A DNA stretch of 64,000 nt from Anthoceros angustus. Lineage: Eukaryota; Plantae; Anthocerotophyta. Each line of letters begins with the position of its first letter. Position 1 is the stretch's first letter. The stretch covers positions 1,426,001 to 1,490,000 of the forward strand of contig MU008161.1 in NCBI GenBank assembly GCA_010909165.1, read 5' to 3'. The notes under the pieces are model-generated. The model was not told where the DNA came from. It ran no database searches and saw only the letters and a list, made by a program, of their open reading frames with translations. Of the stretch, positions 9,791 through 60,780 are shown piece after piece. Both the position numbers and the translations under genes were made by a program.

Positions 9791-10098
9791 GTTTCATTGA
9801 TGTTTTTGGGTCATAATATTACAATTTTTTTAATTAAAAATACTAGGAGATAAAGTAGAGAATTTGACATAGAAGACAATCTTGTGTTGAATTAGTGTCA
9901 TATAACTTTTGTTCGAAAAGTGTCAAAAAGGTACTCAAAAACTCGTTTCATTGATGTTTTTGGGTCATAATATTACAATTTTTTTAATTAAAAATACTAG
10001 GAGATAGAGTAGAGAATTTGACATAGAAGACAATCTTGTGTTGAATTAGTGTCATATAACTTTTGTTCGAAAAGTGTCAAAAAGGTACTCAAAAACTC
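9791..10098. repeat. Near-perfect tandem duplication, 2 x 154 bp, AT-rich
   Basis: GTTTCATTGATGTTTTTGGGTCATAATATTAC...GGTACTCAAAAACTC starts at 9791 and again at 9945; one substitution seen. Confidence 0.95.
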
Positions 10099-10481
10099 GT
10101 TTTGAGTGGCATTGTCCTTCTGGGGTTAAGCCATAGTCCTACTCTGCCATATCGACTTGGTTTAGTATGATATATGTTTGATGAAACTTTCCTTATGCAT
10201 GTTATATTCTGGTTGTTCTAAGCCCTTTTTGATTTCTCTAGAAGAAGCTCAAACTTTTCTTAAATCTACTTTAAACCTCAATCTAACTTTATTAGACCCT
10301 TTTATATTTAGTAGCCTATTTCAATTACTCAATCGTTTCCTAAATTTATAATGCAACTCAATTCTATTTCTCCCTTTTCTAACATGCAATCCAGCTCAAT
10401 TTTATCTATTGACGGAAACCGCTTCACTCTAGCACTTGAACATAAAGATAAGTTTAATGCTAGCTATTTTTTTAATGCAGT

Positions 10482-10682
10482 AAATACCTAGTTATTTTGT
10501 TAATCCTTCTGTGGAATTATTTAATAATATTATTTAATAACAATGACTTCAATATAATGGAAAGGAAATCAAGGAAGCTGTTGGTGGATGCAAATACCTA
10601 GTTATTTCGTTAATGCTTCTGCGGAATTATTTAATAACAATGAGGTAAATCTAATGGAAAGGAAAACGAGGAAGCTGTTGGT
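10482..10682. repeat. Diverged tandem duplication (~100 bp x2) upstream of ECHIDNA
   Basis: AAATACCTAGTTATTT...GGAATTATTTAATAA...TAATGGAAAGGAAA...GGAAGCTGTTGGT occurs twice in succession. Confidence 0.75.
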
Positions 10683-10815
10683 CGATTGTTCGACGTCCGT
10701 GATATGCAAACGGAAATTGCGACGACAGCCATTTTAGGTCTGGTTTTCTGTGCTGAATGTTGTGGCCAGGATCGTGGACTGCAGAGCAGACAAGCTGTAA
10801 CTGGGATTCCATGAG

Positions 10816-12117
10816 ATGGTGAGCACGAGGGCGTTCGCTTTCCCTACTAGCTTAGGGAATGCGTGCAAGAATTAGGCTGAGTGGAAAGTGGACAGGTTGA
10901 GAGAGGGCAAGGGTTGTCAGTAGGGAGGCATCGAAGATCTGGACGAGAGATAGCTCGATTTTCGTGGTTTCACTCATTTCAACTGCCTGCAGCTTGTGCA
11001 ATCCGGTCTAGGGGTTGCAATTCGGCTGGATCTGACCTTTAACAGCTGGCTGGGAACTTTTGGAACAGGCGGATGTGGTGCAACCCCTCTCTCCTTCTGG
11101 ACCGGTGACGGAATCTTATGCTCATCCTGGAGTCGCGTTCTTTCACACCATCTTCAAAGTACTGAGATTTGATCCCTATTAACGGATTAGCCACATTGAA
11201 ATTTTTCTGGCATCAGGCTTTTGTCCTGTTTGATCTGCGGATGCAACGTGGGGAAGCAGGAGCTCATTTTGACACTTGGAAGCTAGAGACGAGCTCAGTG
11301 TTGACTGTTTTTCGTTCAGCACGAATTCTCTGGCATCTCAGTGATAGGTCCGTTTGTTGTTGTCTACAGGGAGCAGCTCTGGCATGGTACCTCCTGTGTG
11401 GATGGCTTGTAGGGAGTTTTGTTCTTCAGTTTGTGATCACGGTGCTGCTATTGGCTTTGGACTTTTGGACCGTGAAGAATGTGAGTGGAAGGATACTAGT
11501 GGGGCTTCGTTGGTGGAACGAGACTAATGAGAATGGGGAAAGCATTTGGAAGTTTGAATCGCTGGATAAGAAGGTTTGTTCTACTGATGTTACTCTACGT
11601 CATGATGTAATTTTGTCCACAGAAACACTCACTGCACACTGTGACGATCCTTTTGCAGACACTAGATGCGATGAATAAGAAGGATACTTGGCTCTTTTGG
11701 TGGTCTCTTTATGTCACTGTAAGCTTTGATACGCTCATCTCCTTGGATGCACCACTCTTAGTGTCTTGCAGGTTACACTTCATTGTGCTTACTTGATATC
11801 TGTGTGTGCAGCCGGCCTTGTGGTTGGCACTTGGTGTCGTGGCTATCATTAAGCTGGAGTTTGATTACTTGCTGATTGTCGCCATTGCTCTAATTCTTGG
11901 TGGCGCCAACATTATTGGTTTCACAAAATGCCGAAAGGGTATGAGCCCTACACCTTGTCGTGCGTGCTCTCGATATATTCAACCTGATGCGTTGAGAAAT
12001 GTTTTGTTTCCCATTGCAGATGCAAAGAACCAGTTTCAGAAGATGGCAGGTCAGGCTGGGGCCATGTACATGGCGTCTAATGCCTTTTCTAGCTTGAGGT
12101 CTGCTATCGGTGGATGA
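10816..12117 (+). CDS. ECH: Golgi/TGN membrane protein TVP23/ECHIDNA
   Basis: [14 protein letters not shown]|GAALAWY...[25 protein letters not shown]...WKFES...FWWSLY...[12 protein letters not shown]|DAKNQFQ. The first coding exon appears to be only the ATG (10816-10818, followed by GTGAG), spliced in frame to ADVVQPLSP. Confidence 0.92.
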
Positions 12118-12694
12118 CGGATTAGAGTACTCGCTTGTTAAGCGCAGCTGAAAATCATGCCGTGGCTGTAGCCATAACACTCTTACGAGGTGGGCAGTGT
12201 CATAAACTACCGTGCCGATGCTGAGCCCTGGGCTCACGAAAGTGCTTCTCATTGAGCTGCGAACCTGAAGTAGGGGTTGGATAGCTTGATGTACATAAGA
12301 CGAGCCTGATATTCCTGTCCAGCAATTGGCATCCTATTCGCATGCCCTTTCCAGGAGCACCGGTATGTTAGGAGGAGTTGCGTATTGCTCTAGGAGATTT
12401 TGGCAAAAGACAGTCCGTAACTGGATGTGTGTGAATGATGGAGTGAACCAGTGTCTTCTGCTGACCGTTTTCTCAAGTTCTATGAAGCGGGGAGCCTGTG
12501 ACTGCAAGGACAGTTGGTGCAACAGTAGTGGAGAAGAAACTAACGAACCGATGAACAAGTTTTGCACTGCCAGAACCAGGTAACGACCGTGTGCAAACGG
12601 TTTCCGTGTATTTCTGCTCAGATCAGCAGCTTCGAAGGTGGCCACTGGTTTGGGTGGGACTGGTTAGCGTGTGAAAGTCACGTTGAAGCTCATG

Positions 12695-13697
12695 TTACAC
12701 TTGAGGAGGCCTCTCCTCATCGAACCACCTAGGGGGATCGAAGCCAGTGCCGCCTGCAACCACACCGTCACTCTCAAGTCATTCATAGAAGACATAGCAC
12801 ACAAGGCAGCATGCCATCCATGTGCAATGAAGTCTCACCAAGGGGATTGCAGCGAGCAAGGCGCCAGAGTGTCAAAACTGTTCCCTTGACAACTCCATAC
12901 CTCTTGTAGGCTTCCTGTGCATACACACTACATGTGGGGACATACCGGCAGCTCCCTGGCAGGTATGGCGAGATTTCACCTGCAAATGCACTTGCTTCAT
13001 AAGAAACACGTTTTCCGCGAAGGACAGTGCCATATTGAGGACTCAGTTGGGCAAGGGCCAAGAAATGGGTATGCATACCCTTGTAAAACTGCAGGAGGGC
13101 AAGTGCGAGCTTCACTCCAGGTTGCTCCTTCTCCGGACTCTGCTCTGTGTCTGCCACCAATTCCACTGCCTAGGGTTTCAATGCAGTACAGGCAGGTGTA
13201 GAGGTAATCCAAGTCCCATCCACGCAAAATTCCAAGCTGTGTGACGGCATCACCTTGAGGCTCGGTGCCATCTTGGAGTGAGCAAGAGCAAACCCACTTG
13301 TGGCTGGCACACTGCGACTTCCCAGCTCTACCCACCAGCTCCCCTTGATAGCAACCAGAAGGCTGAAGCGATGGTGCCACCTCATGGAGCCTGGAAGGAC
13401 CCCTGTTCACAACTGGACCATGGTCTTGACCAATGCTGGCCTGGCATCCCCGGCCTGAAACGGGCCTGCGAATTCTCATCACCCTCGGCGTGAATTCGTG
13501 ACGAGCCTTCGTCAAGCCTCACGCGGGAGGGTAACGGTGTGAAGAACAATGTAAAACATACAGACCTACCGCGCTACGAACGCAGGCTGCGGGCAGACGG
13601 TGATTTCGGCGAACGTGCGTGGCTTCGGCCTCGATTCACGAAGAAGCAAGGAGTGCGCACTGGTAGACAGCTTGACGAGGTGCACGCCAGTCGCCAT
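12695..13697 (-). CDS. YidD/UPF0161 membrane-protein insertion efficiency factor, with organellar-targeting-like N-terminus
   Basis: [13 protein letters not shown]|[47 protein letters not shown]|[14 protein letters not shown]. The CRYxPTCSxY, RCNP and GxDP motifs define YidD. Start at 13697 is inferred. Confidence 0.88.
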
Positions 13698-14040
13698 GGA
13701 CCGACCCAGAGGAGCAAGAGTCGAGGAAATCAGGAGGCCCCATGGACCGAACGATGAGAAGCCAAAATGAAGAAATGTTTTTGAATAAAATGATGTGCGT
13801 CTGGAGCGGGCTATACAGACTCCATCGTGAAGAGCAGAGCCAAGTGAAAATGAGCTTCGCTAACGAGAGATGCAATACACGATAATGGGAGCCGATGGAT
13901 TGATTCTGGTTCTACGAGGAATCCGATGAGGCAAGGGCAATCCAACGGCACCAGGTGCGTGCCGGGAGGCAGGCTCCCGGCGCGCTCTTTATTGTGCCCA
14001 TGTCAGCTCCTCCCCGCCCAGCTGCTCCAGCTGGAGCACA

Positions 14041-14280
14041 TCACTTGCAGTCGCACTTGTTGACGTCATCGTTGCACTTGCTGCAGTCGGGGTCGCCGGA
14101 CATGGCGACGGCCAACACATTCTCGCTGCACGCCATGATAAGAAGAAGCAAATGTTAGGACAGTCGAACGGAGCGAATTCCGAGAGCCACGGCCAGCGCA
14201 CCCAACAATTGAAGAAAGAGCAGAAGAGGAGGAGCAGAAGCAGATGCAGAAGCAGAAGCTCACAACATAGCAGAGGCCAT
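14041..14280 (-). CDS. Small Cys/Asp-rich peptide A, 33 aa: MASAMFENVLAVAMSGDPDCSKCNDDVNKCDCK
   Basis: Exon 1 14280-14264 (17 nt), GT-AG intron 14263-14126, exon 2 14125-14041 ending TGA. TATAAA at 14396-14391. Paralogous to peptides B and C. Confidence 0.85.
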
Positions 14281-14390
14281 TGCGAGCCGGAAGGAAAGCG
14301 AGCGGGGCGTTTGGGAAGCTCGGAGACAGCGAGAGCTCGAGAAGGCAGTGAGTGATTGCTTGCTTTGCCAAACGCAAGTTGCGGTGTGGC

Positions 14391-14396
14391 TTTATA
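14391..14396 (-). promoter_or_regulatory. TATA box of peptide gene A
   Basis: CTATAAAG in GC-rich context ~110 nt upstream of the ATG, followed by a pyrimidine-rich leader; similar spacing in all three paralogs. Confidence 0.7.
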
Positions 14397-15798
14397 GCCC
14401 AAGACGAAGCGGGATGCGCCGGGCGCGGCGAAACGGCGAACGAATCCAGCCAGTGGCGAGTCCATGTTGGCTCTGGGGTGTGTCGCAGTCGTGGTGGTAG
14501 CTGCGGGCCTCGTGGGCAAAGGACGCCGGCACGGGCTCGGCCCCACTCTGCTGCCCCATTTTCTAATGGCGAAACCCGCACGGGTTGCGCCCCTCGGGCG
14601 AAACGGGCGTTTAGCCGGGCGAGTGCTCGGGCCGCGCGCCCGGCTGCGTGCTCCACACAGGGAGGGAGTGTGCAAGTCCTGTGTCAGGCCTGGGCGAGTT
14701 TGTTACACCTGTGGCTCCGGAACGTATGTTGATCCACCATCTGTTTGTCTACCACTGTAAATACAGCGTCTGGGCTATCCGGCTCGCTAGCGCTCTTCAG
14801 ACGTTCGGACAAGAGTGGGTCCACGTACACCTTATCGAGCTCTGGGAGCCATGTCCATGCCAGTATGCGTTGGCAAGTTAATGCTTGCAGAGGTGCAAGC
14901 AGTGTCTCTGCTTGCAGTACGTCGCAGCATCATCTGTAAAGCTTGTGCTGTCAATGAATGGATCTACGGCCAAGGGAAGTTCTACCTATTGGATGAAGGT
15001 GTATAGACAGGAGTCTACGTTCTGTTCTCTTGGCTCCTTCCTGAAGCCAAAGTTCCCCAAGCAATTCTCGAGGGTAGAGAAAGAGTGTACACCACTGTAC
15101 ATGAGTATACATGTATGTTTGAATTCGGGCCCGGGGAATCGAGACAAGCTGGCAATCGCAAGACGATGACGAGCAATCTGGATGGGGGCATTGAAGTACA
15201 CTTGGTACAGGTGCAACTTGTTGGCGAGCGGCTGACGGCAGTGGGACTGTACTGCTGCAGCAAGAGCATGGCTACTGGCCAGGGGGCAGACGATTCCTGA
15301 AACTTCCAAGATTCCCAGCTGCAAACGCACTGACGCTTGCAATTGATACTTGCTGCCATTACCCAGACGGACAGGATGTGCATCGCCCATGTGAAGTGGG
15401 GGCCAGCTACTGTAACTCGCCAAGCAGGGGAGCCGCTGTGGCAAAACCAGGAGATATCCAGACTCCATCTGGAGCACGGTGTCGGATAGGTTTCAAATTT
15501 GGCAAGCTGGGAATCGGATCAGGCGGCTCCTCTCCTCAGGAAGCAGCGGGACTGCCGGTGTCGGTGCAGGTGCAGGTGTGGAATCTTCGATCCCAGCCTC
15601 GCAGGGGCCAGGATGTGGGTGGTGGAAGCACTAATCGCCGCTGTACAGCAACGGCAGGAGGTCGGTGGCAGTTGCAGGTTGGGAAGCCATCCGGACGACA
15701 GAGACCCGTCCGCTTCGCCCGCCTCTACCTCCCGGGGGCCCAGCTAGCGGGGCCAGGGCTCGGCCAATTGCAGGCCTCGCCTCGGCTTGGCTGGAGAG

Positions 15799-15804
15799 TA
15801 TAAA
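15799..15804 (+). promoter_or_regulatory. TATA box of peptide gene B (CCAAT ~35 nt upstream)
   Basis: GTATAAAG ~125 nt upstream of ATG 15928; CT-rich leader follows. Confidence 0.7.
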
Positions 15805-15927
15805 GGCGCAGCAGGCACTCAGCTCTCCTCACACTTTCAAGCTTCCTCGCCCTTCTGCGATCCAAGCTTCCTTCGCCTCTTCCGCTTTCGTCTTGTCTCC
15901 TTCGATCAGCCGCGCTCAGCGCCATCT

Positions 15928-16133
15928 ATGGCCTCTGGAAACATGTGTGTGCTTGCAACAGTCGCTCGGCTGTCCTGTCCTTAATTCACAACTTGTGAGC
16001 GAGTTGAGCGCTGATGAGTGTTGCTTGTGGTGTGAGTGAGTGCAGGAACATGAGCTCCGTCCTGGCGGCTGGCGCCGGAGACCCCGACTGCAGCAAGTGC
16101 AACGACGATGTCAACAAGTGCGACTGCAAATGA
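15928..16133 (+). CDS. Small Cys/Asp-rich peptide B, 34 aa: MASGNMNMSSVLAAGAGDPDCSKCNDDVNKCDCK
   Basis: Exon 1 15928-15944 (17 nt), GT-AG intron 15945-16045, exon 2 16046-16133 ending TGA. The last 18 aa are identical to peptide A despite synonymous nucleotide differences. Confidence 0.85.
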
Positions 16134-18254
16134 AGCGCGCCAATGCGCAAGCAAGCAAGCGTCCCCATGGAGGCGGATTTCACGTTCCATCTTCCGCCTC
16201 TGCCTCCGGCTTGCAGCTTGCTGCTGAAGTGGAGCTGTGCGTGTGCAAACCAAACCCTAACGGCCTGTCTCGATCTTTCAAAAGGCATGTCTCGCTCGAG
16301 TTGGATGAATCCAAGTCGACTCCATTCTCGGCTAGCGGGTAGGGGATGGGGAAAGGGGATGGGGATGGAGTGGGATGTGTCGTCATGTCATGTTGTCGTA
16401 ACTCGTTAAATATGTCAAAGACCTCTTTGTGCCTTTTTGGCTACCTATTATAAAGCGGCGTATATTTTGTTATTAACAAATGGATTGAATGATTCGAGAA
16501 CTCAGTGCGGATTCCCGAACTTCCTCAACATCGTTTCTTGCAAATGCATTGGCCTCTGCTATTGTAGTTGGAAACACTATACGCTATGTTGTGAGAGGCA
16601 TGTGAAACGTCGAGATCCCGGCAAACCTCCGTCAAAGCAGCTGGTCTGGACATTGTGATTTCAGTCAGAGCAGAAGGACATTGGATTATGCTGTTTAGAC
16701 ACAAGGTCTTCACATAACATATTTCATTATCAGGAACATTGCTCATTCCGATTAGCGTTAAGTCGTGCTTGGAGGTAACTGCAGACCACGGACCAGAAGC
16801 TTACGCTGCATAACTCGTTAGATACACGGTTCAGTAGTCCCACAGCACCACTCTCTCAGACTATCGATATCATGCAACTGCGAGTAGCTGGATCTGTCCA
16901 AGCTGCATGAAACAGTCACATATAGCTGCCCAAGTGAAAAAATTAAGGTACCTCCTTTTACATTCCAAATTTCCAACCTACGTATGTGCATACGATATCG
17001 CCCATCCATGACAAGGTGGGAAAAGGCCGGGGCCCGGAGTCTGATGTTGCCACCGATCGGCAAGGCCTTTCGGAGACTCATCCACTTGCCGGGGCCATTT
17101 TTAAGGAACTCCAATGTTGCACCTAGTGCCCAGTGCATCGAATCCCAGTCTCTCAGTAAGTAGCTAGTCTGTACTGAGCATGTCAAGACACAAATACATA
17201 CATGCACATATACGATGGTATGCCCTGAGGCTCTTGGAGTTCGCCGCCAGCGGCCAGGATGAGTTGTGCAATTTCAGGCAGATAGATAGCTTGCGTGGTA
17301 GTCAAGTTATACGGTATACCCCCTCATGCCCCTTCAGATGTACACGCAAGCTTAGAATTTTGATGCCCATGGATATCGAAGGTGTAGCAAAAGCAGAGCC
17401 TTTGAATACTCCGTCTGGACAGGATTCCTTCTTATCCACGATGGGCATTGGCGACAAACGTCCACACGTTGGAAATGTTATAGAAATACGACGCAGTGCT
17501 CAAGCCCAGAAGTTGTGGTCTGAGTTGGAGACAGAAGCTGTAGGAATTGAAACTATATTCCAGTTCCAAATCGTCATGGGCTTGCCACAATTCCAACTTG
17601 CAAGCAAGGTACGTCAGCTGTTTGAACTGATCTACAGGTATTGGATGGATGATGGTGTCACTGCGCAGACAAGCTTCCAATACTTGAACTTGGTTGCAGC
17701 AATGCAGACCGTGTCATGTAGACAGACAAGGCTTGAAATCCAGACAAGAATTTCTTGGCAACTAGGCCCCAATCATGTACACAAAGTTGTCCCATACCTG
17801 TCGCTGAAGCTGAAGCGCCCAGGGTTGGTACGTACTTTTCGAACACTTCCAGTTTACCGGTAGCGCGGACTGTATGTAGATCTTCAGGTTTGAGCTCGAT
17901 TCCAAGGGAACTGTAGAAGCCGTTGTACGTTGATCATGGGCACTGCAGCTGGGCCGATTCCGGGCTCGGGAAGACCTCTGCCGCCCAGATTCCTCAACAC
18001 GAGTCTGAGAAGAGATTCCTTGCGGAGAGTAGTGGGCCCGGGCCCGGGGTCCGGCTGCTCGGGCTCGGGCCAGCCCGGCCATGGCGTGTGTGGCTGCTGC
18101 TCTGCAGCGTCCTGCTCCTGACTCCTGACTCCTGGGGCCCCGGTAGTGGAGGCAGATGGACCACCACCAACCCGATCCAGGCCGTGCCTTTCCCACCGCC
18201 AACAGCCCAGCTGGTTGCGCCGGCCAGGCAGGGGCAAAACCGCTCCCGGCCCGC

Positions 18255-18260
18255 TATAAA
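18255..18260 (+). promoter_or_regulatory. TATA box of peptide gene C
   Basis: CTATAAAAG ~106 nt upstream of ATG 18366; CT-rich leader follows. Confidence 0.7.
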
Positions 18261-18365
18261 AGGCCTGGCAGGCAGACCATTTCTCATCAACTGCTCTCTC
18301 GCTTCCATCGCCTTCTGCTTCACTACACCACTCTTTGCTCTCCTCCGCGACTCTTCTCAGCGACC

Positions 18366-18561
18366 ATGGCCTCCGGCAACGTGTACGAGCCCCGCCTCCT
18401 CCTCCTGCGGCTGTCTCTCCGTTTGCAGACTTGTGCTGGCTCAGCGTTCTGATGAATTGAATGCTGTCTTTGATCACAGGCACTTCGTCCTGGCCGCGGC
18501 CGGTGGAGACCCCGACTGCGTCAGGTGCAGCGACGATGCCAACAAGTGCGACTGCAAGTGA
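18366..18561 (+). CDS. Small Cys/Asp-rich peptide C, 32 aa: MASGNVHFVLAAAGGDPDCVRCSDDANKCDCK
   Basis: Exon 1 18366-18382 (17 nt), GT-AG intron 18383-18479, exon 2 18480-18561 ending TGA. All 4 Cys and the Asp positions are conserved with A and B. Confidence 0.85.
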
Positions 18562-19604
18562 AGCGCCTGCTGCTGCAGACATGGGTTGAGTGGCTTCATC
18601 ATCCGGAGGCGGGGGTCAGGGAGAGCTGGAATCAAGGAAGGCTCTAGGCTGCAAATTCGGCCATTGTTTTGAAAAGGGAGTTTGTAGCATGGCCCAAGCC
18701 TCCGGAAGCATGTCAGCTATTTATCTAGAAATGAAACCTCAGCCCATCGTTGTAGACAGCTGCGCTGTAATGTGCGCTGGAACCTTTTGTACGCGTCTTC
18801 TTGCATATATGTAAAGGGTGAGAGATTTCCAGCTTACCCCTCTCTCCATCTTGTCAGCTATGCCAGCGAGTGTCTCCATGTCGTCAGCTGTGCTTCGTCT
18901 GTCCCGGAGACAGCTCTAGACTCTAGAGAACAACCACGCAATGTTCATGACAAGTGAGGCACTGAATCACATTGCAATTGTTTTCTGATCAGAATGGTTG
19001 CCTAGGGAGCCAGCATCGTGCCTCGCTTAGCCTCACCTCTGTAAAGTTGTATAGCCTGTCGCTAGTGCTCAGCGTTGGTGCAGGCGCTGATCGTGAGAAG
19101 GCCGGGCTGAAGCTGTCGAACAAACGATCCTGATGCTTTCTCGTGCTACTCATGCTTCTCTTGTTAACCTCGGATGCTTTCATGAGAGAGCGACACATGA
19201 GGAAGCTGTTTTGTTATAATCGTAGCTTAAAAGAGGTCCAAAGGGAATTCGTTCCCCTCCATGTGACCCGGGTTTTCACTACCTAACAAGGAATCACTCC
19301 AGCCGCTCTGAGGGAAGAAGAGATGTCCACGAGCACTACCTGGTGAAAAATGAAAGCCACAGCAAAATTGTGGGACCCGATAACTAAGGTGTGTCGAAAG
19401 GCCCCACAACTTCAGTCACGCACTCAAGATTTCAGGTTTCGGAAAGCCTAAGGGGCTTCACGGTGAAGCAAACAGATGAGACAGTGAGAATAAACACCAC
19501 GTTGGTTTGTTTCAATATGAAGGCGAGAGGCCCCTTGCCACGGGAAACAAAAACACGAGACACTGCCTCCACAGAAACAGCTTGAAAGACGCAACAAAAA
19601 TTGG

Positions 19605-20315
19605 CTACTCATCCTCCTGGCTGCGAAGACGAGCAGAGGCGTTGGTGACGGCAACATTCAACTGCTGAGCCCTTTCGACAATGGCCTTCCTCTTCGCAGT
19701 TGACACGTTGTGTGCAATTTCTGCACTGTACTTCCTGCACGTTGGAAGAACATCCATAAATTCCCGAGTCAACCCTACGTGCCCTGAGGATAAGGCTCTG
19801 CCCATCTCGCTTTGCAACATTCAGCAAGGAAATGACATACAGGTGCTTCACAACGTAACACACCTGTTGTGCATCAACAGCAGGTCCAGCTCCTTCACGT
19901 TGTGCACAAGGAACTTGACAAAACCGCTGGGCAGCACATGTCGGGTCTTCTTGTTCGAGCCGTAACCAATGTTAGGCATCAAAGTTGTCCCCTTGAACTT
20001 CCTCCTCACGCGGGAGTCAATACCCTTGGGCCGTCTCCAGTTCTCCTGGATCGCACAGGCAGTCACAAATCAACCACCCGAGTCCTCAACCGCATGGGCC
20101 TCACCTGTTGTACCCTATCATTCTCCAAAGCAGGACGCCTCTCAAACCTAGTCCTGCACAACACCACAGCGGAGACGCAAAACACACGACTGCGCACTCT
20201 CAAACCCTCGGCTCGAAAACCTCACCTTCACAGAGATCTTGCGGTCAGACTGCATGCGCTTGAACTTCTTCACGCGCTTCTTCACCACCACCCGCTTCAC
20301 CAAAGGAGTCACCAT
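19605..20315 (-). CDS. RPL32: 60S ribosomal protein L32 (eL32), three coding exons
   Basis: [30 protein letters not shown]|[19 protein letters not shown]...[13 protein letters not shown]...LLMHNR|[11 protein letters not shown]...[12 protein letters not shown]. Confidence 0.98.
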
Positions 20316-20520
20316 GGTTGCCGCAGCGCTGCCGCGCCCCGCACCCACAAGTTGCTACAGCCGATTGTCCGTGGCGGAAAACAGAAAGAGACAGGTGATG
20401 GTGGGCAACAAGGTTTTGTATGTGCCCTAGCCCTAATTCGTAATTCCTTCCCGAGACTAGTGTCCATATTTTCCGAGTAAGGTGCTACTTTAGGCGACTG
20501 GAACATCGTCGAGGAACGCC

Positions 20521-21147
20521 ATGGGTGTGCCCGCTGCGTCATCGTGCGCAGACATGAGCCTCAACACGCTCCACGAGGCCATACAAGCGAGGCGGTTCAA
20601 GGATCTGGCGGTCATCTGCGACACCTTGGAGCTGGAGGCTTTGGCGGCGGGGCGCGGCAAGCCGCAGGACTGGCCTTATGCAGTGCACATCCTGGCGCAT
20701 GTGGCCGTGCAGGACCTGGACTCGGCCAGGTTCGTGTGGAAGCAGATTCCGGCGCAGGTGAAGCAGAACCAGCCGGAAGTGGCGGCCGCTTGGAGGATCG
20801 GGCAGTGCATGTGGATCAGGGATCACGCCGGGGTGCACGAAGCGCTGCGCAGCTACAATTGGAGTCCGGAGGTGCAGCCTGTGGTTTGCGCTGTGGCTGA
20901 GGAGTACTCGCGCAAAATCTTCAAGCTCCTGTCCACGGCCTACTCCACCATCAGCGTCGCGGACGCTGCCAGGTTCCTAGGGCTGTCGGAGAACGACACG
21001 GCGGCCTTCACCGCGCAGCACGGCTGGGTGCTGGATCCCGCCACCAGGATGCTCTCTGTCACCCGGATCTCACCTCCTTCGCAGCAGAAGAAGGACAAGG
21101 GTCACTTGCAAAACCTGACCGAGTATGTCTTCCACTTGGAGCACTAG
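20521..21147 (+). CDS. CSN8: COP9 signalosome subunit 8 (PCI domain), intronless
   Basis: DWPYAVHILAH...DLDSARFVWKQIP...QPEVAAAWRIGQCMW...LLSTAYSTIS...LQNLTEYVFHLEH*, matching the plant COP9/CSN8 C-terminus. Start may be 20521 or 20554. Confidence 0.93.
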   Translation: MGVPAASSCADMSLNTLHEAIQARRFKDLAVICDTLELEALAAGRGKPQDWPYAVHILAHVAVQDLDSARFVWKQIPAQVKQNQPEVAAAWRIGQCMWIRDHAGVHEALRSYNWSPEVQPVVCAVAEEYSRKIFKLLSTAYSTISVADAARFLGLSENDTAAFTAQHGWVLDPATRMLSVTRISPPSQQKKDKGHLQNLTEYVFHLEH

Positions 21148-21696
21148 CGGCCACTGCTCCAGCTCTTTCACACGATTCTCATCCGGCCGGCTCTGGAGCA
21201 GGAGCTTCACCGGGCTGGCCTCTATTCTTCAGGACCTTTGTAAATTCCGCATCTTCGGTAGAGAATCACCTATGCCTGGATTGGCACATTCATTGAGCCT
21301 TTGTTGATGCTCTTGACATCTGAACAGGGTTTTTAGGTGGCCCTTGACATGAACATTTGTATGAATCAGCAAACACATTCTTCCTCTCTTCAACATTTCG
21401 CGGCATACCACGCCTGTCCTGGCCCCACACGCTACCTGCAGCTCGCATTAGTGCGTCTCAGGAATCGGATGCGCTAGTGTGGACAACGTCGTCTACCAGC
21501 GGCTTACATTACGGGCAGGATTTGTTGAGCGCTTAGGGCAAACAAGGCAAAAATACAAAGGGCAAAACCACACGAGGAAGTCACCAGAACTAGTAAGCGT
21601 GGTCTCGCTCGAGGAGTCTGTGCAAGGTGCCGGTCGAAGGGAGATCCGTGCGGCGCATTGAGCCGTCGCGCACGAGGAGCTCTCCTGCCTGCCATA

Positions 21697-24294
21697 ATGG
21701 TGGTCCTGGCGGCTTCCGTGATCAGCAAGACCGGGAAAGGTGCGCGATCTGGATCCGCTGGTTTGGGGTTCTGCACTGGATCTATGGCAGTCAGGCCTTG
21801 GCAATTGACGTTAGGGTGGTGTGACTATGCTGACTTCGATTTCTGGTGCGCCAGCTCTTGTTTCCCGGCAGTTTGTCGACATGCCAAGGATACGGATCGA
21901 AGGGCTGCTTGCTGCGTTCCCGAAGCTCGTTGGGAGTGGGAAGCAGCATACGTTTGTGGAGACTGAGAACGTTCGCTACGTGTATCAGCCGATGGAGAAT
22001 TTGTACCTCCTCCTTGTGACCAACAAACAAAGTAACATACTGGAGGATTTGGAGACGCTCAGGCTCTTGTCCAAGCTGGTATTGTTTAGATCGCTTTTTG
22101 TCTCTCTTGTTCCGGGAATGAAGCAGTTTTGCGAACGCTGTGTCATGCCCTGCTCAACTGGGATTTTGTTTGACTGGATTAGGTTCCAGAGTACTGCCCG
22201 ACACTTGACGAAGAGGGGATCTGCACTGTTGCCTTCACGCTGATCTTTGCCTTCGACGAAGTCATTTCATTGGGTCATAAGGAAAATGTAACTGTTGCGC
22301 AAGTTAAACAGTACACAGAAATGGAGAGTCATGAGGAAAGACTGCACAAGCTGATTATCCAGAGCAAGATCAACGATACTAAGGATGTGATGAAGCGGAA
22401 GGCCAGTGAGATTGATAAGAACAAGGTATTGACTTTGATGTTTCGTTTAGTTCTTGTGAGGTTTGGCCTAGCTGGGTTTGCGGTGTGGGATGCTTTGAAA
22501 CTGTGGAGAACTTGCCCAAGCTAAGGAAGTGGATGATTGTGTATGCAGATATTGCAGAGTGACAGGCAACGGGAATTGAAAGGAGGTTTTGCGTCTGTTA
22601 ACTCTTCGGGAGCCATCAGATTTGACAATGGTATCAGTGATTTAAGTGATCTGGGGAGCAGTTCGGGATTTGGCTCAGGCCTAGATTCAGACCCCTTCGG
22701 AAAACCAAAAGGTTGTATGCCCTTTCTCCCTCTTGCCAGAGCCTCTTGTAATGTCCAGGGCGAAATGCAGGTTAGGTGTGCTTCGTGCATCCTAATAAGC
22801 TTAACTTTTATCATTACAGGACGGTCAACACAACCTGTCCCCGCTGTTGCCAAAGGAGCTGGTATGAAGCTTGGCAAGTCACAGAAGGCAAACCAGTTCT
22901 TAGAATCCTTGAAGGCGGAAGGTGAAGTGATTGTAGAGGATGTCCATGCGGCACCTGGGCCTTTGCAGACAGCTTTTATTCCTACAGATCCTATCACTAT
23001 TACTGTGGAAGAGCGGCTTGAAGTCACTTTGAAGAAGGACGGTGGTCTGGAGAATTTTGAAGTGCAGGGTACCATGGCGTTAGTTGTTCAAAAACAAGAA
23101 GATGCTTTTCTTCAAGTTCAGGTCTGGTTTTCTTGAAGTTGAGTAAATGACAACATTTTTTTTGTCGAAAGTAGGGTTTTTCCTGCCTACATTGCCAAAA
23201 CCAACCTGAGGATGTATGCCATGCAATTCAGGGTGAAAGAAGTGTGGTAGTCTGACACTGTGAAATGATTGTCGCAGATTGAAACGGGTGAAAACAGAAA
23301 TTTCCAGTTCAAGACCCATCCCCTCATTGACAAGAACCTGTATCTAAGAGAGAATATACTCGGCTTGAAGGAGCCGAACAGACCTTTTCCAACTGGTAGC
23401 CCCTCAGGGATATTGAAGTGGCGAATGCAAAGCAAGCAGGACTCTCTTGTTCCTCTTGGCAGTAAGTGCTTGGCTGTTGGATTTCAATCTTGCACATTAG
23501 AGATCATAATTTTCTGTTGGATGCTCTGAGCCTGGCACCAAGAAACCTGAACTGCATGATGTGAGCTCTACCTCTGATGTGGGTTTGTTGTCTCCAGTAA
23601 ATTGCTGGCCCTCTGTCTCTGGCGGGGAATGTTACATCAACATTGAGTATGAAGCCTCAAAAGCATTTGATCTGCAGAATGTTGTAATCAGCATACCCTT
23701 GCCACCTTTGCGGGATCCACCAAGCATGAATCAAGTTGATGGAGACTGGACGTAAGTGAAGAGACTTCAAGTCCCCTGAACAGTATCATTGGCTGTCATC
23801 TTGTACTGATGGATCTTGTACTGGCAGGTATGATGCGCGAAAGTCCGTCCTGGAATGGTCTATCACCTTGATTGACAATACCAATCGGAAGTAAGCCATC
23901 ACGTCTATGTAATCCCAGTCTCTCCCGCTTTTGCTGCTTGTTAGACATCTGACCGTCGTCCTGTCTGTGAACTTCACCAAAACCATAGTGGGACCATGGA
24001 GTTTGTGGTGCCACCAGCAGATCCGTCGGCCTTCTTCCCGATTGATGTGAAATTCACTGCCACCAAGACATTCTGTGATATCAAGGTATGTACTTTGTTG
24101 CCTACGTGCTTAGTAAACAAGGACCTTTGGCAATTTAAAATTGTCTGACGTCGTTGAGTACTTTGTCGGCTGCATATTGCTGAATCTGTGTCGTTTGAAT
24201 TCAGGTTGGCACCGTTAAGAACACGCAAAGTGGATCTCTTGCAAAATTTGCCGGACCCACTCAGCTGGTGGTTGATAGCTACCAAGTTGTGTGA
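21697..24294 (+). CDS. Coatomer subunit delta (delta-COP), multi-exon
   Basis: [14 protein letters not shown]|[48 protein letters not shown]...[10 protein letters not shown]...[11 protein letters not shown]...NCWPSVSGG...[13 protein letters not shown]|SGTMEFVVP...SYQVV*. Confidence 0.97.
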
Positions 24295-24588
24295 TCTTAC
24301 TGCCGACAGTGATTACACGTCGGTGTTTTCATACGTTGGTAGGCAGGGCATTGAAGCCTGCCTCCACGTCGGATAAATGTGTACTCCTTATGGAAGGAAA
24401 GGTGCCGAACAGCCACTAGCACCGAGGAGAGGCCCTCAAATCGCAGAATGATCTCAGGAGGAGAGGCTCTCGCAATTTTTTCATTATGTGCTACTGCTTG
24501 TTGGTGGTGAGACCAGGATAGGCTGTAGCCGGGAGAAGCTTCTCCTGGCATTGTATGCCTTAGAACGGCCCCGTCATCTGTTCCCTAT

Positions 24589-25237
24589 TGTTTACGAAGC
24601 ACGTCCTTGTTTAGCAATCACAATTTTTAAATTGCGAAAGGTCCTTGTTTACTAAGACGTTGGAGCCGACGCAGCGATGTATGGCAGCCCTTACTTGATG
24701 TATGGCAGCCCTTACTTGCAATGTATGGCAGCCCTTATTTGCAATGTATGGCAGCACTCACTTGCAATATATGGCAGCCCTCACTTGCAATGTATGGCAG
24801 CCCTCATTTGCAATGTATGGCAGCACTCACTTGCAATGTATGACACCCTCACTTGCAATGTATGGCAGCCCCTCACTTGCAATATATGGCAGCCCTCACT
24901 TTAGGGCAAAGGAAATGATGAGGAGCTTTAGTGGGTGAGGAGTTTTTCCAAGTCCCACATAACCTGCAATGGTATAGCATTCATATGACCATGGGAAGAT
25001 TATAGTCTCTTTCAATTGCGCACCTTGCAGTATTGCATTGAGATGACATTGGGAAGAGTATAGTCTCTTTAAGTTGCGCACCTTGGGAAGAGTATAGTCC
25101 CTTTGAGTTGCACACCTTGGGAAGAGTATAGTCTCTTGCAATGATACGATGTGTAATGTAGGGGAATGAGAACCCCTTGCTGAAGATTTCTTCCCAGGTT
25201 TGTTTTGATTTATTTTAAAAATAATAATTTAAATAGA
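24589..25237 (+). mobile_element. Non-coding LINE-3'-tail (SINE-like or truncated) copy containing an expanded minisatellite
   Basis: From TTGGAGCCGA (24660) onward it aligns with the 3' UTR of the LINE at 26200-26464. It ends in an A-rich tail and is flanked by ATCTGTTCCC(T/A)AT at 24576 and 25238. Confidence 0.7.
24677..24900 (+). repeat. Minisatellite, ~22-bp unit ATGTATGGCAGCCCTCACTTGCA, about 10 copies
   Basis: Directly visible tandem array; the unit is present once in the homologous copy at ~26217. Confidence 0.95.
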
Positions 25238-28054: not shown

Positions 28055-28617
28055 GGATCTCTCCTACCCCTGCTGTCCGAGAACTGCTTTCTGAGCTGGG
28101 ATTGCGCAGTGCGGGATACTCTGGACAAGAGATGTGCAAACTGCTGAAGGCCTGGCTTGAAGTTCCCAATCCCTGTGCATGGGCAAGCAGATAAATGGCC
28201 GGGGAAGAAGAGGTGTAGCTGCAGTAACGGGTACAGGTACAACTGGACAGGGGCTATAGGGAATCTTCCTTGCGACCAGGCTTTCGCCCACTTGGTCTTC
28301 CCGTTTCGTTCGGCATTCCAGCTCGCAGGGACAAGTTCTGCAGCTTTCGGGGTTCTGTATGGTTTTTTAATCGAACAACTTGGGTGAGTGATCAACACTA
28401 AAGTCCAAACATGAAGCAGCTAGCACCTCTCCTTGCACCTGCCATGCATAATAGGGGAGCATGGAAAGAAGATTCCGGAAGTGAGGCCTTTGGAGGTCGT
28501 GTGGCTGACATACGTAGGGATGGTACCCCATTCTGCAGGTGGGGATCCGGGCATCTACCTCAGACCACTCTCGAATGGCACAGCACACGGTGTCAGGGAT
28601 TCTAGTCTGGTGTGGGG

Positions 28618-30912
28618 ATGGCCTTCACTTGCACAACATCGTCTGTACTTGCCCATGACTTGGACTCCTGGGCATGGGCAGGCACGGAGCTGCTTACCCT
28701 GCTCCGAGGGGACCAGCAGGAAAGTAAGCCCTGTATTCAGACGTACAGGAATCTTTTGCAGGTGTGTATGAAACACAAACGCCTTGCGCAGGCCAAGTTG
28801 GTGCATGCTCACCTGGTTGAACATGGGCTGGAAACCAACAGAGGGGTGTGCGACCTTGTGGTGGCCACGTTGGTCAAATGCGGGGGCCTTGAAGATGGGA
28901 TCCAATTGTTCAACAGGCTGCCGCACCCAAGCATTTTGTCTTGGACAGCCATCATTTCAGGTTATGTCAACAGTGGGCTATGCCGGAATGCTTTGTCACT
29001 CTTTGAGCAGATGAAAAAAGAAGGCGTGCAACCCAACAGGTATACGTTTGTCAGCTTACTGAAAGCCTGCAGCAGGTTGGAAGACCTGGAGCAAGGCAGG
29101 CAGATTCATGCTCATGCTCTCAGACTTGGGTTTGGATCAGATTTGTTTGTTAGCAGCACGTTGGTTAGTATGTATGCCAAGTGTGGGAGCATCAAGGACG
29201 CTCAGCAGGTGTTTGATGCAATGTGTCAGCGTGATGTAGTGTCATGGAATGCAATACTTGGGGCACATGCACAGCAGGAGCAAGGAGCTGAGGCTTTGAA
29301 ATTTTATCGGCGAATGCAAATGGAAGGAATCACGCCCACAGCAAGAACTTTTGTCAGTGCTCTTCAAGCTTGCGGCAGACTTGCGGAAACGGAGGAATGC
29401 ACATTTCTGGATGGGCAGTTTCTGAAGGTGGCATCTCTGCAGAAGGGACGAGAAATACACGCTAGCACCAGAGTTGGGGGTTTTGAGACCGATATCTATA
29501 TTGGGAACACTTTAGTCAGCATGTACGCCAAGTGTGGGAGCATCAAGGATGCGGAACAGGTGTTCGAAAAGCTGTCCCAGCGTGATGTTGTGACATGGAC
29601 TGCCATGATAGCAGGATACGCCCAGCAGGACCGAGGAGACATAGCCTTGGAGCTTTTTGTGAAGATGCAAAATGACAGGGTCAGGCCAAACGCAAGGACC
29701 TTTGTCAGTGCTCTCCAAGCTTGTAGCAGCCTTGCAGGGAAAGAGGAAAGCATAATGGTGGATGGGCAATATGTGAAGGTGAGGGCACTGCAGACGGGCA
29801 GGGAAATCCATGCTGGGGCAAGTTTATGCGGCTTTGAACCAGACCTCTTTGTCGCCAACACTTTGGTTAGCATGTATGCAAAATGCGGGAGCATCAAGGA
29901 TGCGGAACAGGTGTTTGAAAGGCTGTCACACCGTGATGTGGTCTCATGGACAGCTATGATTGCAGGTTATGCGCACCAGGAGCAAGGAGATAAGGCACTG
30001 CAAATCTATGGGCAGATGCAATCAGAAGGTGTGAAGTCGGATGAGTCTACATTTGTGTCAGTGCTAGAAGCATGCAGCTGTGTAGGAGCGCTAGATGTGT
30101 GTGTGCAAGTCCACCATTGTATTGTAGAAAATGGATTGGAGTCCAAAAACTCTGTGGCAACCAGCCTCATTCATGCATATGGCAAATGTGGGAGCATGGT
30201 GGATGCTCAACGAGTCTTTGACTCATTGCTCCAGCCAGACGTGGTGTCCTGGACAGCACTGATTTGTGGGTACGCACGACTGGGTGATGGTGAGATGGCC
30301 ATTGCAAGCTTCGAGGACATGAAGATGGCAGGTGTGAGACCAAACACACTCACGTTCACAGCACTCCTGTCTGCATGTAGTCATGCTGGCATGGTGGACA
30401 GGGGCCTCGCTTACTTCCAGAGCATGACTAGAGATCATGGCATCTTTGCAGAGGTGGATCATTATGCGTGTGTGATCGATCTGGTGGGCCGTGCAGGACT
30501 CTTAAGCAGGGCAGCACAGCTGGTATCGCAAATGCCAATGCCGCCTGATCTGCCAGTGTGGTTGTGTCTGTTGAGTGCTTGTCGAAAGCATTGCAATGTG
30601 GTGCTCGCAAAGCGTGCCTTCGAGGCTGCCATGGATCTGGATCCTTGGCATGCGGCAGCCTACGTGCTCATGTCAAGCATATATGCTAATGCTGGGATGA
30701 GGGAGTCTGCAATTGGGGTTGATCAGTTCGGACAGAGTGCCATTGCAAGCAAGAAGCCCGGCCAGAGCTGGATCGAGCATAAACAACAGATACATACATT
30801 TGCAGTGGGCGACCACAAGCATCAGCAAAACGCCATGATGTTTAATCTGCTCCAATCTATGGGCATCGAACTGGAGAAAGCAGGGTATGGACCGGTGTGC
30901 AAAAGATCGTAG
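28618..30912 (+). CDS. PLS-class pentatricopeptide repeat protein with E1/E2/E+ extension, no DYW domain (organellar RNA-editing factor type)
   Basis: Repeated TLVSMYAKCGSIKDA..VF / DVVSWTAMIAGYA / TFVSALQACS triplets; ALLSACSHAGMVDRG; HYACVIDLVGRAG; PG box KKPGQSWIE...HTFAVGD; stops shortly after KAGYGP. Single long ORF. Confidence 0.95.
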   Translation: MAFTCTTSSVLAHDLDSWAWAGTELLTLLRGDQQESKPCIQTYRNLLQVCMKHKRLAQAKLVHAHLVEHGLETNRGVCDLVVATLVKCGGLEDGIQLFNRLPHPSILSWTAIISGYVNSGLCRNALSLFEQMKKEGVQPNRYTFVSLLKACSRLEDLEQGRQIHAHALRLGFGSDLFVSSTLVSMYAKCGSIKDAQQVFDAMCQRDVVSWNAILGAHAQQEQGAEALKFYRRMQMEGITPTARTFVSALQACGRLAETEECTFLDGQFLKVASLQKGREIHASTRVGGFETDIYIGNTLVSMYAKCGSIKDAEQVFEKLSQRDVVTWTAMIAGYAQQDRGDIALELFVKMQNDRVRPNARTFVSALQACSSLAGKEESIMVDGQYVKVRALQTGREIHAGASLCGFEPDLFVANTLVSMYAKCGSIKDAEQVFERLSHRDVVSWTAMIAGYAHQEQGDKALQIYGQMQSEGVKSDESTFVSVLEACSCVGALDVCVQVHHCIVENGLESKNSVATSLIHAYGKCGSMVDAQRVFDSLLQPDVVSWTALICGYARLGDGEMAIASFEDMKMAGVRPNTLTFTALLSACSHAGMVDRGLAYFQSMTRDHGIFAEVDHYACVIDLVGRAGLLSRAAQLVSQMPMPPDLPVWLCLLSACRKHCNVVLAKRAFEAAMDLDPWHAAAYVLMSSIYANAGMRESAIGVDQFGQSAIASKKPGQSWIEHKQQIHTFAVGDHKHQQNAMMFNLLQSMGIELEKAGYGPVCKRS

Positions 30913-60741: not shown

Positions 60742-60780
60742 AACCCTAAACCATAAACCCTAAACCCAACCCCCTAAACC
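60742..60780 (+). repeat. Degenerate telomeric (CCCTAAA)n run at the presumed LINE 5' junction
   Basis: AACCCTAAACCATAAACCCTAAACCCAACCCCCTAAACC. Confidence 0.7.

What the first reader, a model, noticed from the sequence alone, without database searches (positions are those of the whole stretch)
14041..18561. Cluster of three unannotated micro-genes encoding a 32-34 aa peptide family ending GDPDCxxCxDDxNKCDCK
Seen in sequence: three paralogs (A 14280-14041 minus; B 15928-16133 and C 18366-18561 plus). Each has TATAAA ~105-125 nt upstream, a pyrimidine-rich leader, an MAS start, a 17-nt first coding exon, a phase-2 GT-AG intron at the same position and a TGA right after CDCK. Introns and flanks show no obvious similarity, but the 18-aa C-terminal core is identical in A and B (synonymous changes only) and keeps all Cys/Asp in C, which indicates purifying selection on the peptide. 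They fall below the 60-aa ORF cutoff. Established knowledge: plant metallothioneins types 1-4 are longer and have more Cys in two or three clusters; IRON MAN peptides end in APAA; secreted Cys-rich peptides have a full signal peptide. None fits. Inference: a minimal single-site metal-binding peptide (CxxC + CxC + 5 Asp), or a precursor with a variable 14-16 aa hydrophobic leader and a conserved processed core.
Basis: partly seen in the sequence, partly recalled or inferred. Interest (0 to 1): 0.92.

Follow-up and report, generated by a model that had tools for sequence, protein, structure and literature searches.

The report
Hornwort four-cysteine micropeptide gene family
A hornwort-type plant carries several tiny two-exon genes (splicing seen in RNA for two of the three here) encoding 32-35-residue peptides with a conserved acidic four-cysteine tail; a second, distant genome has the same gene layout, nothing described matches, and the peptide most likely binds a metal, which is untested.

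Summary
The three micro-genes are real. All coordinates, the 17-nt first exons, phase-2 GT-AG introns and 32-34 aa frames check out. RNA contigs cover exons only and cross the B and C junctions exactly; A's own junction was not seen. This scan had already found the family on another piece of the same genome (s1-316622). New here: an exhaustive profile search returned two relatives, both from one other genome (run SRR33208241, species not identified). Both have the same 17-nt first exon and intron phase, with unalignable 341 and 377 nt introns; one keeps gene A's subtype (pS 0.80, pN 0.13). A neighbouring gene places this genome where hornworts branch. Pfam, NCBIfam, PDB, ESM Atlas, prokaryote, virus and literature searches found no match. 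It fails the definitions of plant metallothioneins, IRON MAN peptides and signal-peptide-bearing cysteine-rich peptides. Best reading (about 45%): an abundant cytosolic, metallothionein-like single-site Zn/Cu chelator or thiol buffer. Rivals: a regulatory microprotein (25%) or a processed, exported disulfide peptide (20%). Translation, metal binding and induction are untested.

The parts
14391..14396 (-). TATA box of gene A
   Evidence: sequence
14264..14280 (-). Gene A first coding exon, 17 nt (5 codons + 2 nt)
   Evidence: sequence; no RNA contig covers it; same exon seen in an expressed close paralog (loose ends) and in L122
14126..14263 (-). Gene A intron, 138 nt, GT-AG, phase 2
   Evidence: predicted; junction not observed directly
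14041..14125 (-). Gene A second coding exon to stop; 33-aa product
   Evidence: RNA contigs cover the 13971-14141 bin, and 3' UTR pieces match with 0 mismatches
13800..14040 (-). Gene A 3' UTR (at least this far; runs toward the YidD gene)
   Evidence: RNA contigs in X1 and X2
15799..15804 (+). TATA box of gene B
15842..15927 (+). Gene B 5' leader (transcribed part seen)
   Evidence: contigs begin at 15842-15868 in four runs
15928..15944 (+). Gene B first coding exon, 17 nt
15945..16045 (+). Gene B intron, 101 nt
   Evidence: joint 15944-16046, GT..AG, in runs X1, X3, X4
16046..16133 (+). Gene B second coding exon to stop; 34-aa product
16134..16468 (+). Gene B 3' UTR
   Evidence: contig 16137-16468, 0 mismatches
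18255..18260 (+). TATA box of gene C
18366..18382 (+). Gene C first coding exon, 17 nt
18383..18479 (+). Gene C intron, 97 nt
   Evidence: joint 18382-18480, GT..AG, in run X1
18480..18561 (+). Gene C second coding exon to stop; 32-aa product
18562..18836 (+). Gene C 3' UTR
   Evidence: contigs to 18811-18836 in X1, X2, X3

Best explanation
A small multigene family of stand-alone, two-exon microprotein genes, so far seen in a hornwort-type genome and one other plant genome. The product most likely stays in the cytosol and works like a minimal metallothionein. SHOWN: gene structure; spliced RNA for B and C; selection on the peptide; the same exon layout and subtype in a second genome. INFERRED: translation from the first ATG and removal of Met1; no secretion; the four invariant cysteines (CxxC, 6-7 residues, CxC) bind one Zn(II), or Cu(I) in a small cluster or dimer, with the invariant Asp residues helping to capture the ion; the short hydrophobic block before the core mediates dimerisation or docking. 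Several strongly driven copies would give an abundant metal and thiol-redox buffer.
For: Invariant columns across five genes in two genomes are 4 Cys, 4 Asp, a Pro and 2 Lys. CxC and CxxC are the metal-binding motifs of metallothioneins (PMC8070800). No signal-peptide-like run; exon 2 is net acidic, -1 to -3. TATA boxes, exon-2 GC3 of 0.86-0.93 against 0.55 for the neighbouring PPR gene (but 0.84 for CSN8), at least five copies and contig depths near 10,000-25,000 in X1 fit an abundant product, though contig depth is no measure of expression. One intron, as in MT types 1-2. The pre-core block (Val-Leu-Ala plus small residues) loosely resembles the MT2 spacer start VLGVAP (PMC3071770). That review lists no hornwort MT and says hornwort metal responses are unstudied.
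Against: Only 4 Cys (11-13%) in one cluster, against 10-17 in two or three clusters for plant MTs and 7 in the short fungal MTs. No Pfam metallothionein hit. Four-Cys microproteins do not always bind zinc: 5 of 14 archaeal examples were zinc-free (PMC11241148). GTAC (copper-response-like) boxes are about 2.5-fold enriched upstream here but not in the two relatives. Near-invariance of non-Cys core residues and subtype conservation of the pre-core block suggest a binding partner more than a plain sponge. No induction or binding data.
Confidence: 0.45

Rival explanations
1. Intracellular regulatory microprotein: the Cys4 tail is a structural zinc knuckle or a metal/redox switch, and the peptide acts by binding a partner protein through the hydrophobic pre-core block, in the way IRON MAN peptides block BRUTUS-type ligases.
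For: Core residues besides Cys are invariant. The A subtype keeps its pre-core sequence in the second genome while synonymous sites are saturated (pS 0.80, pN 0.13). IMA/FEP peptides show that short, Asp-rich, C-terminally conserved peptides can work this way (PMC10167411).
Against: No partner or motif match; no IMA-type C-terminus; apparent high abundance suits a stoichiometric role; AlphaFold gives no fold (mean pLDDT 55).
Confidence: 0.25
2. Precursor of an exported or processed two-disulfide peptide (signal or defence peptide, or RiPP-like product); the 14-17 N-terminal residues are a leader.
For: Two-part design: moderately hydrophobic N-part (GRAVY 0.7-1.3) and conserved C-terminal core; even number of Cys; multigene family.
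Against: Longest hydrophobic run 3-6 residues, with Asp, Glu, Lys or Arg in the pre-core segment of three of five genes. No modifying enzyme nearby in either genome: neighbours are YidD, DUF846, CSN8 and PPR here, RETICULATA-like, GT2 and golgin there. Acidic charge argues against a cationic antimicrobial.
Confidence: 0.2
3. Not functional as a peptide: noncoding RNA, repeat remnant or upstream ORF of a neighbour.
For: No direct evidence of translation. A's RNA appears to run toward the YidD gene, whose likely start lies about 340 nt after A's stop. B versus C alone shows pN about equal to pS.
Against: Synonymous bias in 7 of 10 pairwise core comparisons at p<0.05; frame kept across a conserved phase-2 intron in two genomes; B and C contigs end 250-335 nt after the stop, well short of the next gene; neighbours differ between loci.
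Confidence: 0.05

Closest known systems
Plant metallothioneins types 1-3 (Pfam Metallothio_2 and related)
   Same: Small, acidic, CxC and CxxC motifs, no signal peptide, multigene, one intron as in types 1-2; a hydrophobic Cys-free block loosely like the MT2 spacer start; CxC-Lys ending like MT1/MT2 (from memory, not tested).
   Different: 32-35 aa and 4 Cys in one cluster against 45-89 aa and 10-17 Cys in two or three clusters; no N-terminal Cys domain; C-terminal spacing CxxC-x6/7-CxC rather than three CxC; no profile match.
Short fungal Cu-thioneins (Neurospora crassa MT, Agaricus AcMT2 group)
   Same: Length up to about 35 aa; single Cys cluster; presumed metal chelation.
   Different: They carry a seven-Cys motif; here four Cys, many Asp, and a Cys-free N-half.
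IRON MAN / FEP peptides
   Same: Short non-secreted plant peptides with a variable N-part and a conserved Asp-rich C-terminal motif.
One-domain zinc-finger microproteins (Haloferax C(P)XCG proteins)
   Same: Under 70 aa, four Cys as the main conserved feature.
   Different: Two CxxC-type knuckles there, CxxC plus CxC here; prokaryotic; no match in prokaryote genomes.
Secreted cysteine-rich peptides (defensin-like, RALF, EPF)
   Same: Small multigene Cys-containing plant peptides with a conserved C-terminal part.
   Different: No signal peptide; far shorter; no Pfam match.

Membership tests
Plant metallothionein types 1-4 | 10-17 Cys in two or three Cys-rich domains separated by a Cys-free spacer | tested here: not met
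   4 Cys, one cluster against Table 2 of PMC10603854
Plant metallothionein types 1-4 | Cys arranged as CxC, CxxC or CC motifs | tested here: met
   CxxC and CxC in all five genes; definition
Plant metallothionein types 1-4 | Match to a metallothionein profile | tested here: not met
   No Pfam or NCBIfam hit for exon-2 sequences; HMMER filters drop weak hits, and a profile-profile test was not possible
Plant metallothionein types 1-4 | Binds d10 metals in thiolate clusters; metal or stress induction | not testable with these tools
   needs ESI-MS and expression series
Short fungal Cu-thioneins | Seven-Cys motif | tested here: not met
   four Cys
IRON MAN / FEP | About 50 aa with the Asp-rich IMA consensus at the C-terminus | tested here: not met
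   32-35 aa, ends Cys-x-Cys-Lys; definition
IRON MAN / FEP | Induced by Fe deficiency; binds BTS/HRZ | not testable with these tools
   no suitable RNA series or interaction data
Secreted cysteine-rich peptides | Cleavable N-terminal signal peptide with a 7-15 residue hydrophobic core | tested here: not met
   hydrophobic runs of 3-6 residues, charged residues in the pre-core segment; no SignalP available, judged by hydropathy only
Plant RiPP precursors (orbitide, BURP-type, PawS) | Conserved leader or follower around a hypervariable core, often with a linked processing enzyme | tested here: inconclusive
   the variable part is subtype-conserved across species; no enzyme among the neighbours examined, but plant RiPP enzymes are often unlinked
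CaaX-prenylated proteins | Cys at -4 followed by aliphatic residues and an accepted terminal residue | tested here: not met
   Cys is at -4, but followed by Asp/Asn, Cys and Lys; rule from established knowledge

The most novel reading that the evidence does not exclude
A previously unseen class of plant metal-sensing microprotein, old within hornworts: Zn or Cu binding to a four-Cys acidic tail controls a hydrophobic docking segment. It may be a 'half-metallothionein' that kept only spacer and tail, which would make it the lowest-Cys metallothionein-like peptide among those compared here and a bryophyte counterpart of IRON MAN signalling.
Probability: 0.18. Interest if true: 0.8.

Novelty: new variant of a known kind. 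Interest (0 to 1): 0.55.

Why it matters
Metal handling in hornworts is essentially unstudied (PMC8070800), and these genes lie below normal annotation cut-offs although RNA contigs suggest they are strongly expressed. If the peptide chelates Zn or Cu with only four cysteines, it is a minimal, chemically synthesisable plant metal-binding module and can be tested at once by mass spectrometry, in yeast mutants and in transformable Anthoceros agrestis. Conservation of a 17-nt first exon and of subtypes across two distant genomes shows an old family that annotation has missed.

Tried and rejected
Word-indexed homologue search with padded exon 2 of B: nothing, but it missed the two relatives found later, so it is insensitive here. 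A repeat with an alignment found only those two among 46 candidates. tblastn-confirmed scans of metagenome, prokaryote and viral contigs: no relative. PDB sequence search, Pfam, NCBIfam, ESM Atlas: blank. AlphaFold model too poor to use (pLDDT 55), Foldseek blank. GTAC copper-response boxes: noticed by eye, modestly enriched, not repeated in the relatives; rejected as support. Synteny between the window and L123/L124: none by tblastx; a weak CSN8 hit did not reproduce. The species of SRR33208241 could not be named. Ten literature searches gave no description of the family. The 'half-MT' origin rests on a six-residue resemblance and on remembered MT intron phase; it could not be tested because no MT sequence was available by reference.
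Full report
OBSERVATION. Each has a TATA box 111-129 nt before the ATG, a leader without upstream ATG, G at +4, a 17-nt first coding exon, a phase-2 GT-AG intron (138, 101, 97 nt) and a second exon ending in Cys-Asp-Cys-Lys-stop. Products are 33, 34 and 32 aa. A codon pattern for the core matches exactly three times in the window; shuffles give 0.00 even with two mismatches. Introns and 3' flanks do not align beyond chance; B and C share one short upstream match. A and B differ at four synonymous and no nonsynonymous sites in the 18-codon core (p 2e-4), whereas B and C differ at one synonymous and five nonsynonymous sites, all five at non-Cys, non-Asp positions.

EXPRESSION. Five runs hold part of the stretch; four were laid. 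They are RNA by guess only, but coverage falls on exons and UTRs alone, with zero over both intergenic stretches. Contigs cross B's intron (15944-16046, GT..AG; X1, X3, X4) and C's intron (18382-18480, GT..AG; X1). A's 3' UTR is covered without mismatch, but its first exon is not covered and its junction was not seen; a hole in filtered contigs proves nothing either way. Loose ends show two further expressed paralogues not in the window. Read by hand, one is A-like, already spliced at the same phase and one codon shorter (32 aa); the other is only partly visible. X2-X4 are near-identical to this genome at low depth and may be the same species or carry-over, so they are not independent conservation evidence. 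Depths of about 10,000-25,000 in X1 hint at strong expression but cannot measure it.

ORGANISM. The window holds a PPR gene with an E motif and a CSN8 gene. CSN8 is 58-62% identical to liverwort, moss and fern proteins and 56-58% to lycophyte proteins. In a tree it falls as sister to mosses plus liverworts (93/69 for that group, 97/92 for the clade excluding it), the position of hornworts. This is one gene with moderate support.

A SECOND GENOME. An exhaustive HMMER search of 1.84 billion representatives with an exon-2 profile gave two hits, P0001 (E 4e-6) and P0002 (E 1e-5). Both are gene calls from intronic ATGs on genomic contigs of run SRR33208241. Upstream of each lies a 17-nt exon starting Met-Ala, followed by GTAAG and an intron of 341 or 377 nt ending in CAG at the same phase; such an exon is expected about 0.02 times per 600 nt by chance. 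Products are 35 and 33 aa. L122 is A-type: it keeps the pre-core residues of A, has TATAA about 127 nt upstream, and shows pS 0.80 against pN 0.13 over exon 2. L121 resembles B and C, has one extra residue between the Cys pairs and no TATAA within 750 nt. Their introns and flanks barely or not at all align with ours. The A and B/C subtypes therefore probably predate a split deep enough to saturate silent sites. That organism has a plant-type RETICULATA-like gene and compact genes with short introns, shown by a companion RNA run; another hornwort is likely but not shown. The relatives' junctions are predicted, not observed. No synteny was found.

WHAT IT IS NOT. No hit in Pfam, NCBIfam, PDB, ESM Atlas, prokaryote genomes, viral or metagenome contigs. 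Absence from mosses and liverworts is weak evidence, since such short products are rarely annotated. It fails the Cys-number and two-domain criteria of plant metallothioneins, the seven-Cys motif of short fungal ones, the IRON MAN motif and a signal-peptide test by hydropathy. Ten literature searches found no description.

MECHANISM. Eleven columns are invariant over five genes: four Cys, four Asp, one Pro, two Lys. With no export signal the peptide should stay in the reducing cytosol, where four thiols plus carboxylates most simply bind one Zn(II), or Cu(I). Multi-copy, TATA-driven, GC3-rich small genes resemble metallothionein genes in behaviour. I put this metallothionein-like chelator or thiol buffer at 0.45. 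A regulatory microprotein with a metal or redox switch (0.25) explains better why non-Cys residues and the hydrophobic block are conserved. A processed, exported disulfide peptide (0.20) explains the two-part design but lacks a signal peptide. Four-Cys microproteins can be metal-free, and the AlphaFold model is uninformative. A descent from plant MTs by loss of the N-terminal domain is suggested only by a six-residue resemblance to the MT2 spacer and is untested.

METHOD NOTES. To meet minimum lengths, exon 2 of B was extended by reference with in-frame upstream codons, essentially intronic: 2 in alignments A2 and A4 and; P0001 and P0002 also carry intronic residues. Joined exons were translated only inside local scripts to check frame and length.

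VERDICT. A real, expressed, conserved and undescribed microprotein family; new variant of a known kind (small Cys-rich metal-binding peptides); function untested; interest 0.55.

Noticed in passing
window 13697-about 12700, minus strand: A YidD (PF01809) gene starts about 340 nt after gene A's stop, with a transit-peptide-like first exon; a 574-nt X1 contig covering A's 3' UTR runs past 13800 toward it, so the transcripts may overlap or read through.
   Followed up: partly
window 15842-15945 joined to 18486-18836: One contig of run X2 joins B's 5' end and B-type core to C's 3' UTR: a B/C recombinant allele in that sample or an assembly chimera.
   Followed up: no
window 13800-14093: An X2 contig has A's 3' UTR with the core of the A-like paralogue (five differences), suggesting gene conversion, an allele, or a chimera.
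   Followed up: no
window 14136 (minus) and 16014 (plus): In-frame ATGs near the 3' ends of the A and B introns would give 31- and 39-aa unspliced products with the same tail; the two database relatives were called from similar intronic ATGs. Probably incidental.
   Followed up: no
window 14825-15249 and 17609-17925: Clusters of GTAC boxes (7 and 5) upstream of the genes, about 2.5 times background; not repeated in L121 or L122.
   Followed up: yes
Possible loose linkage, not testable.
   Followed up: partly
window 20521-21147 and 28612-30912: Intronless CSN8 gene and a PPR gene with an E motif; DUF846 exon at 11169-11678.
   Followed up: yes
window 60742-60780 and 24677-24901: Short interstitial plant telomere-like AACCCTA array and a 23-bp, ten-copy tandem array.
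   Followed up: no
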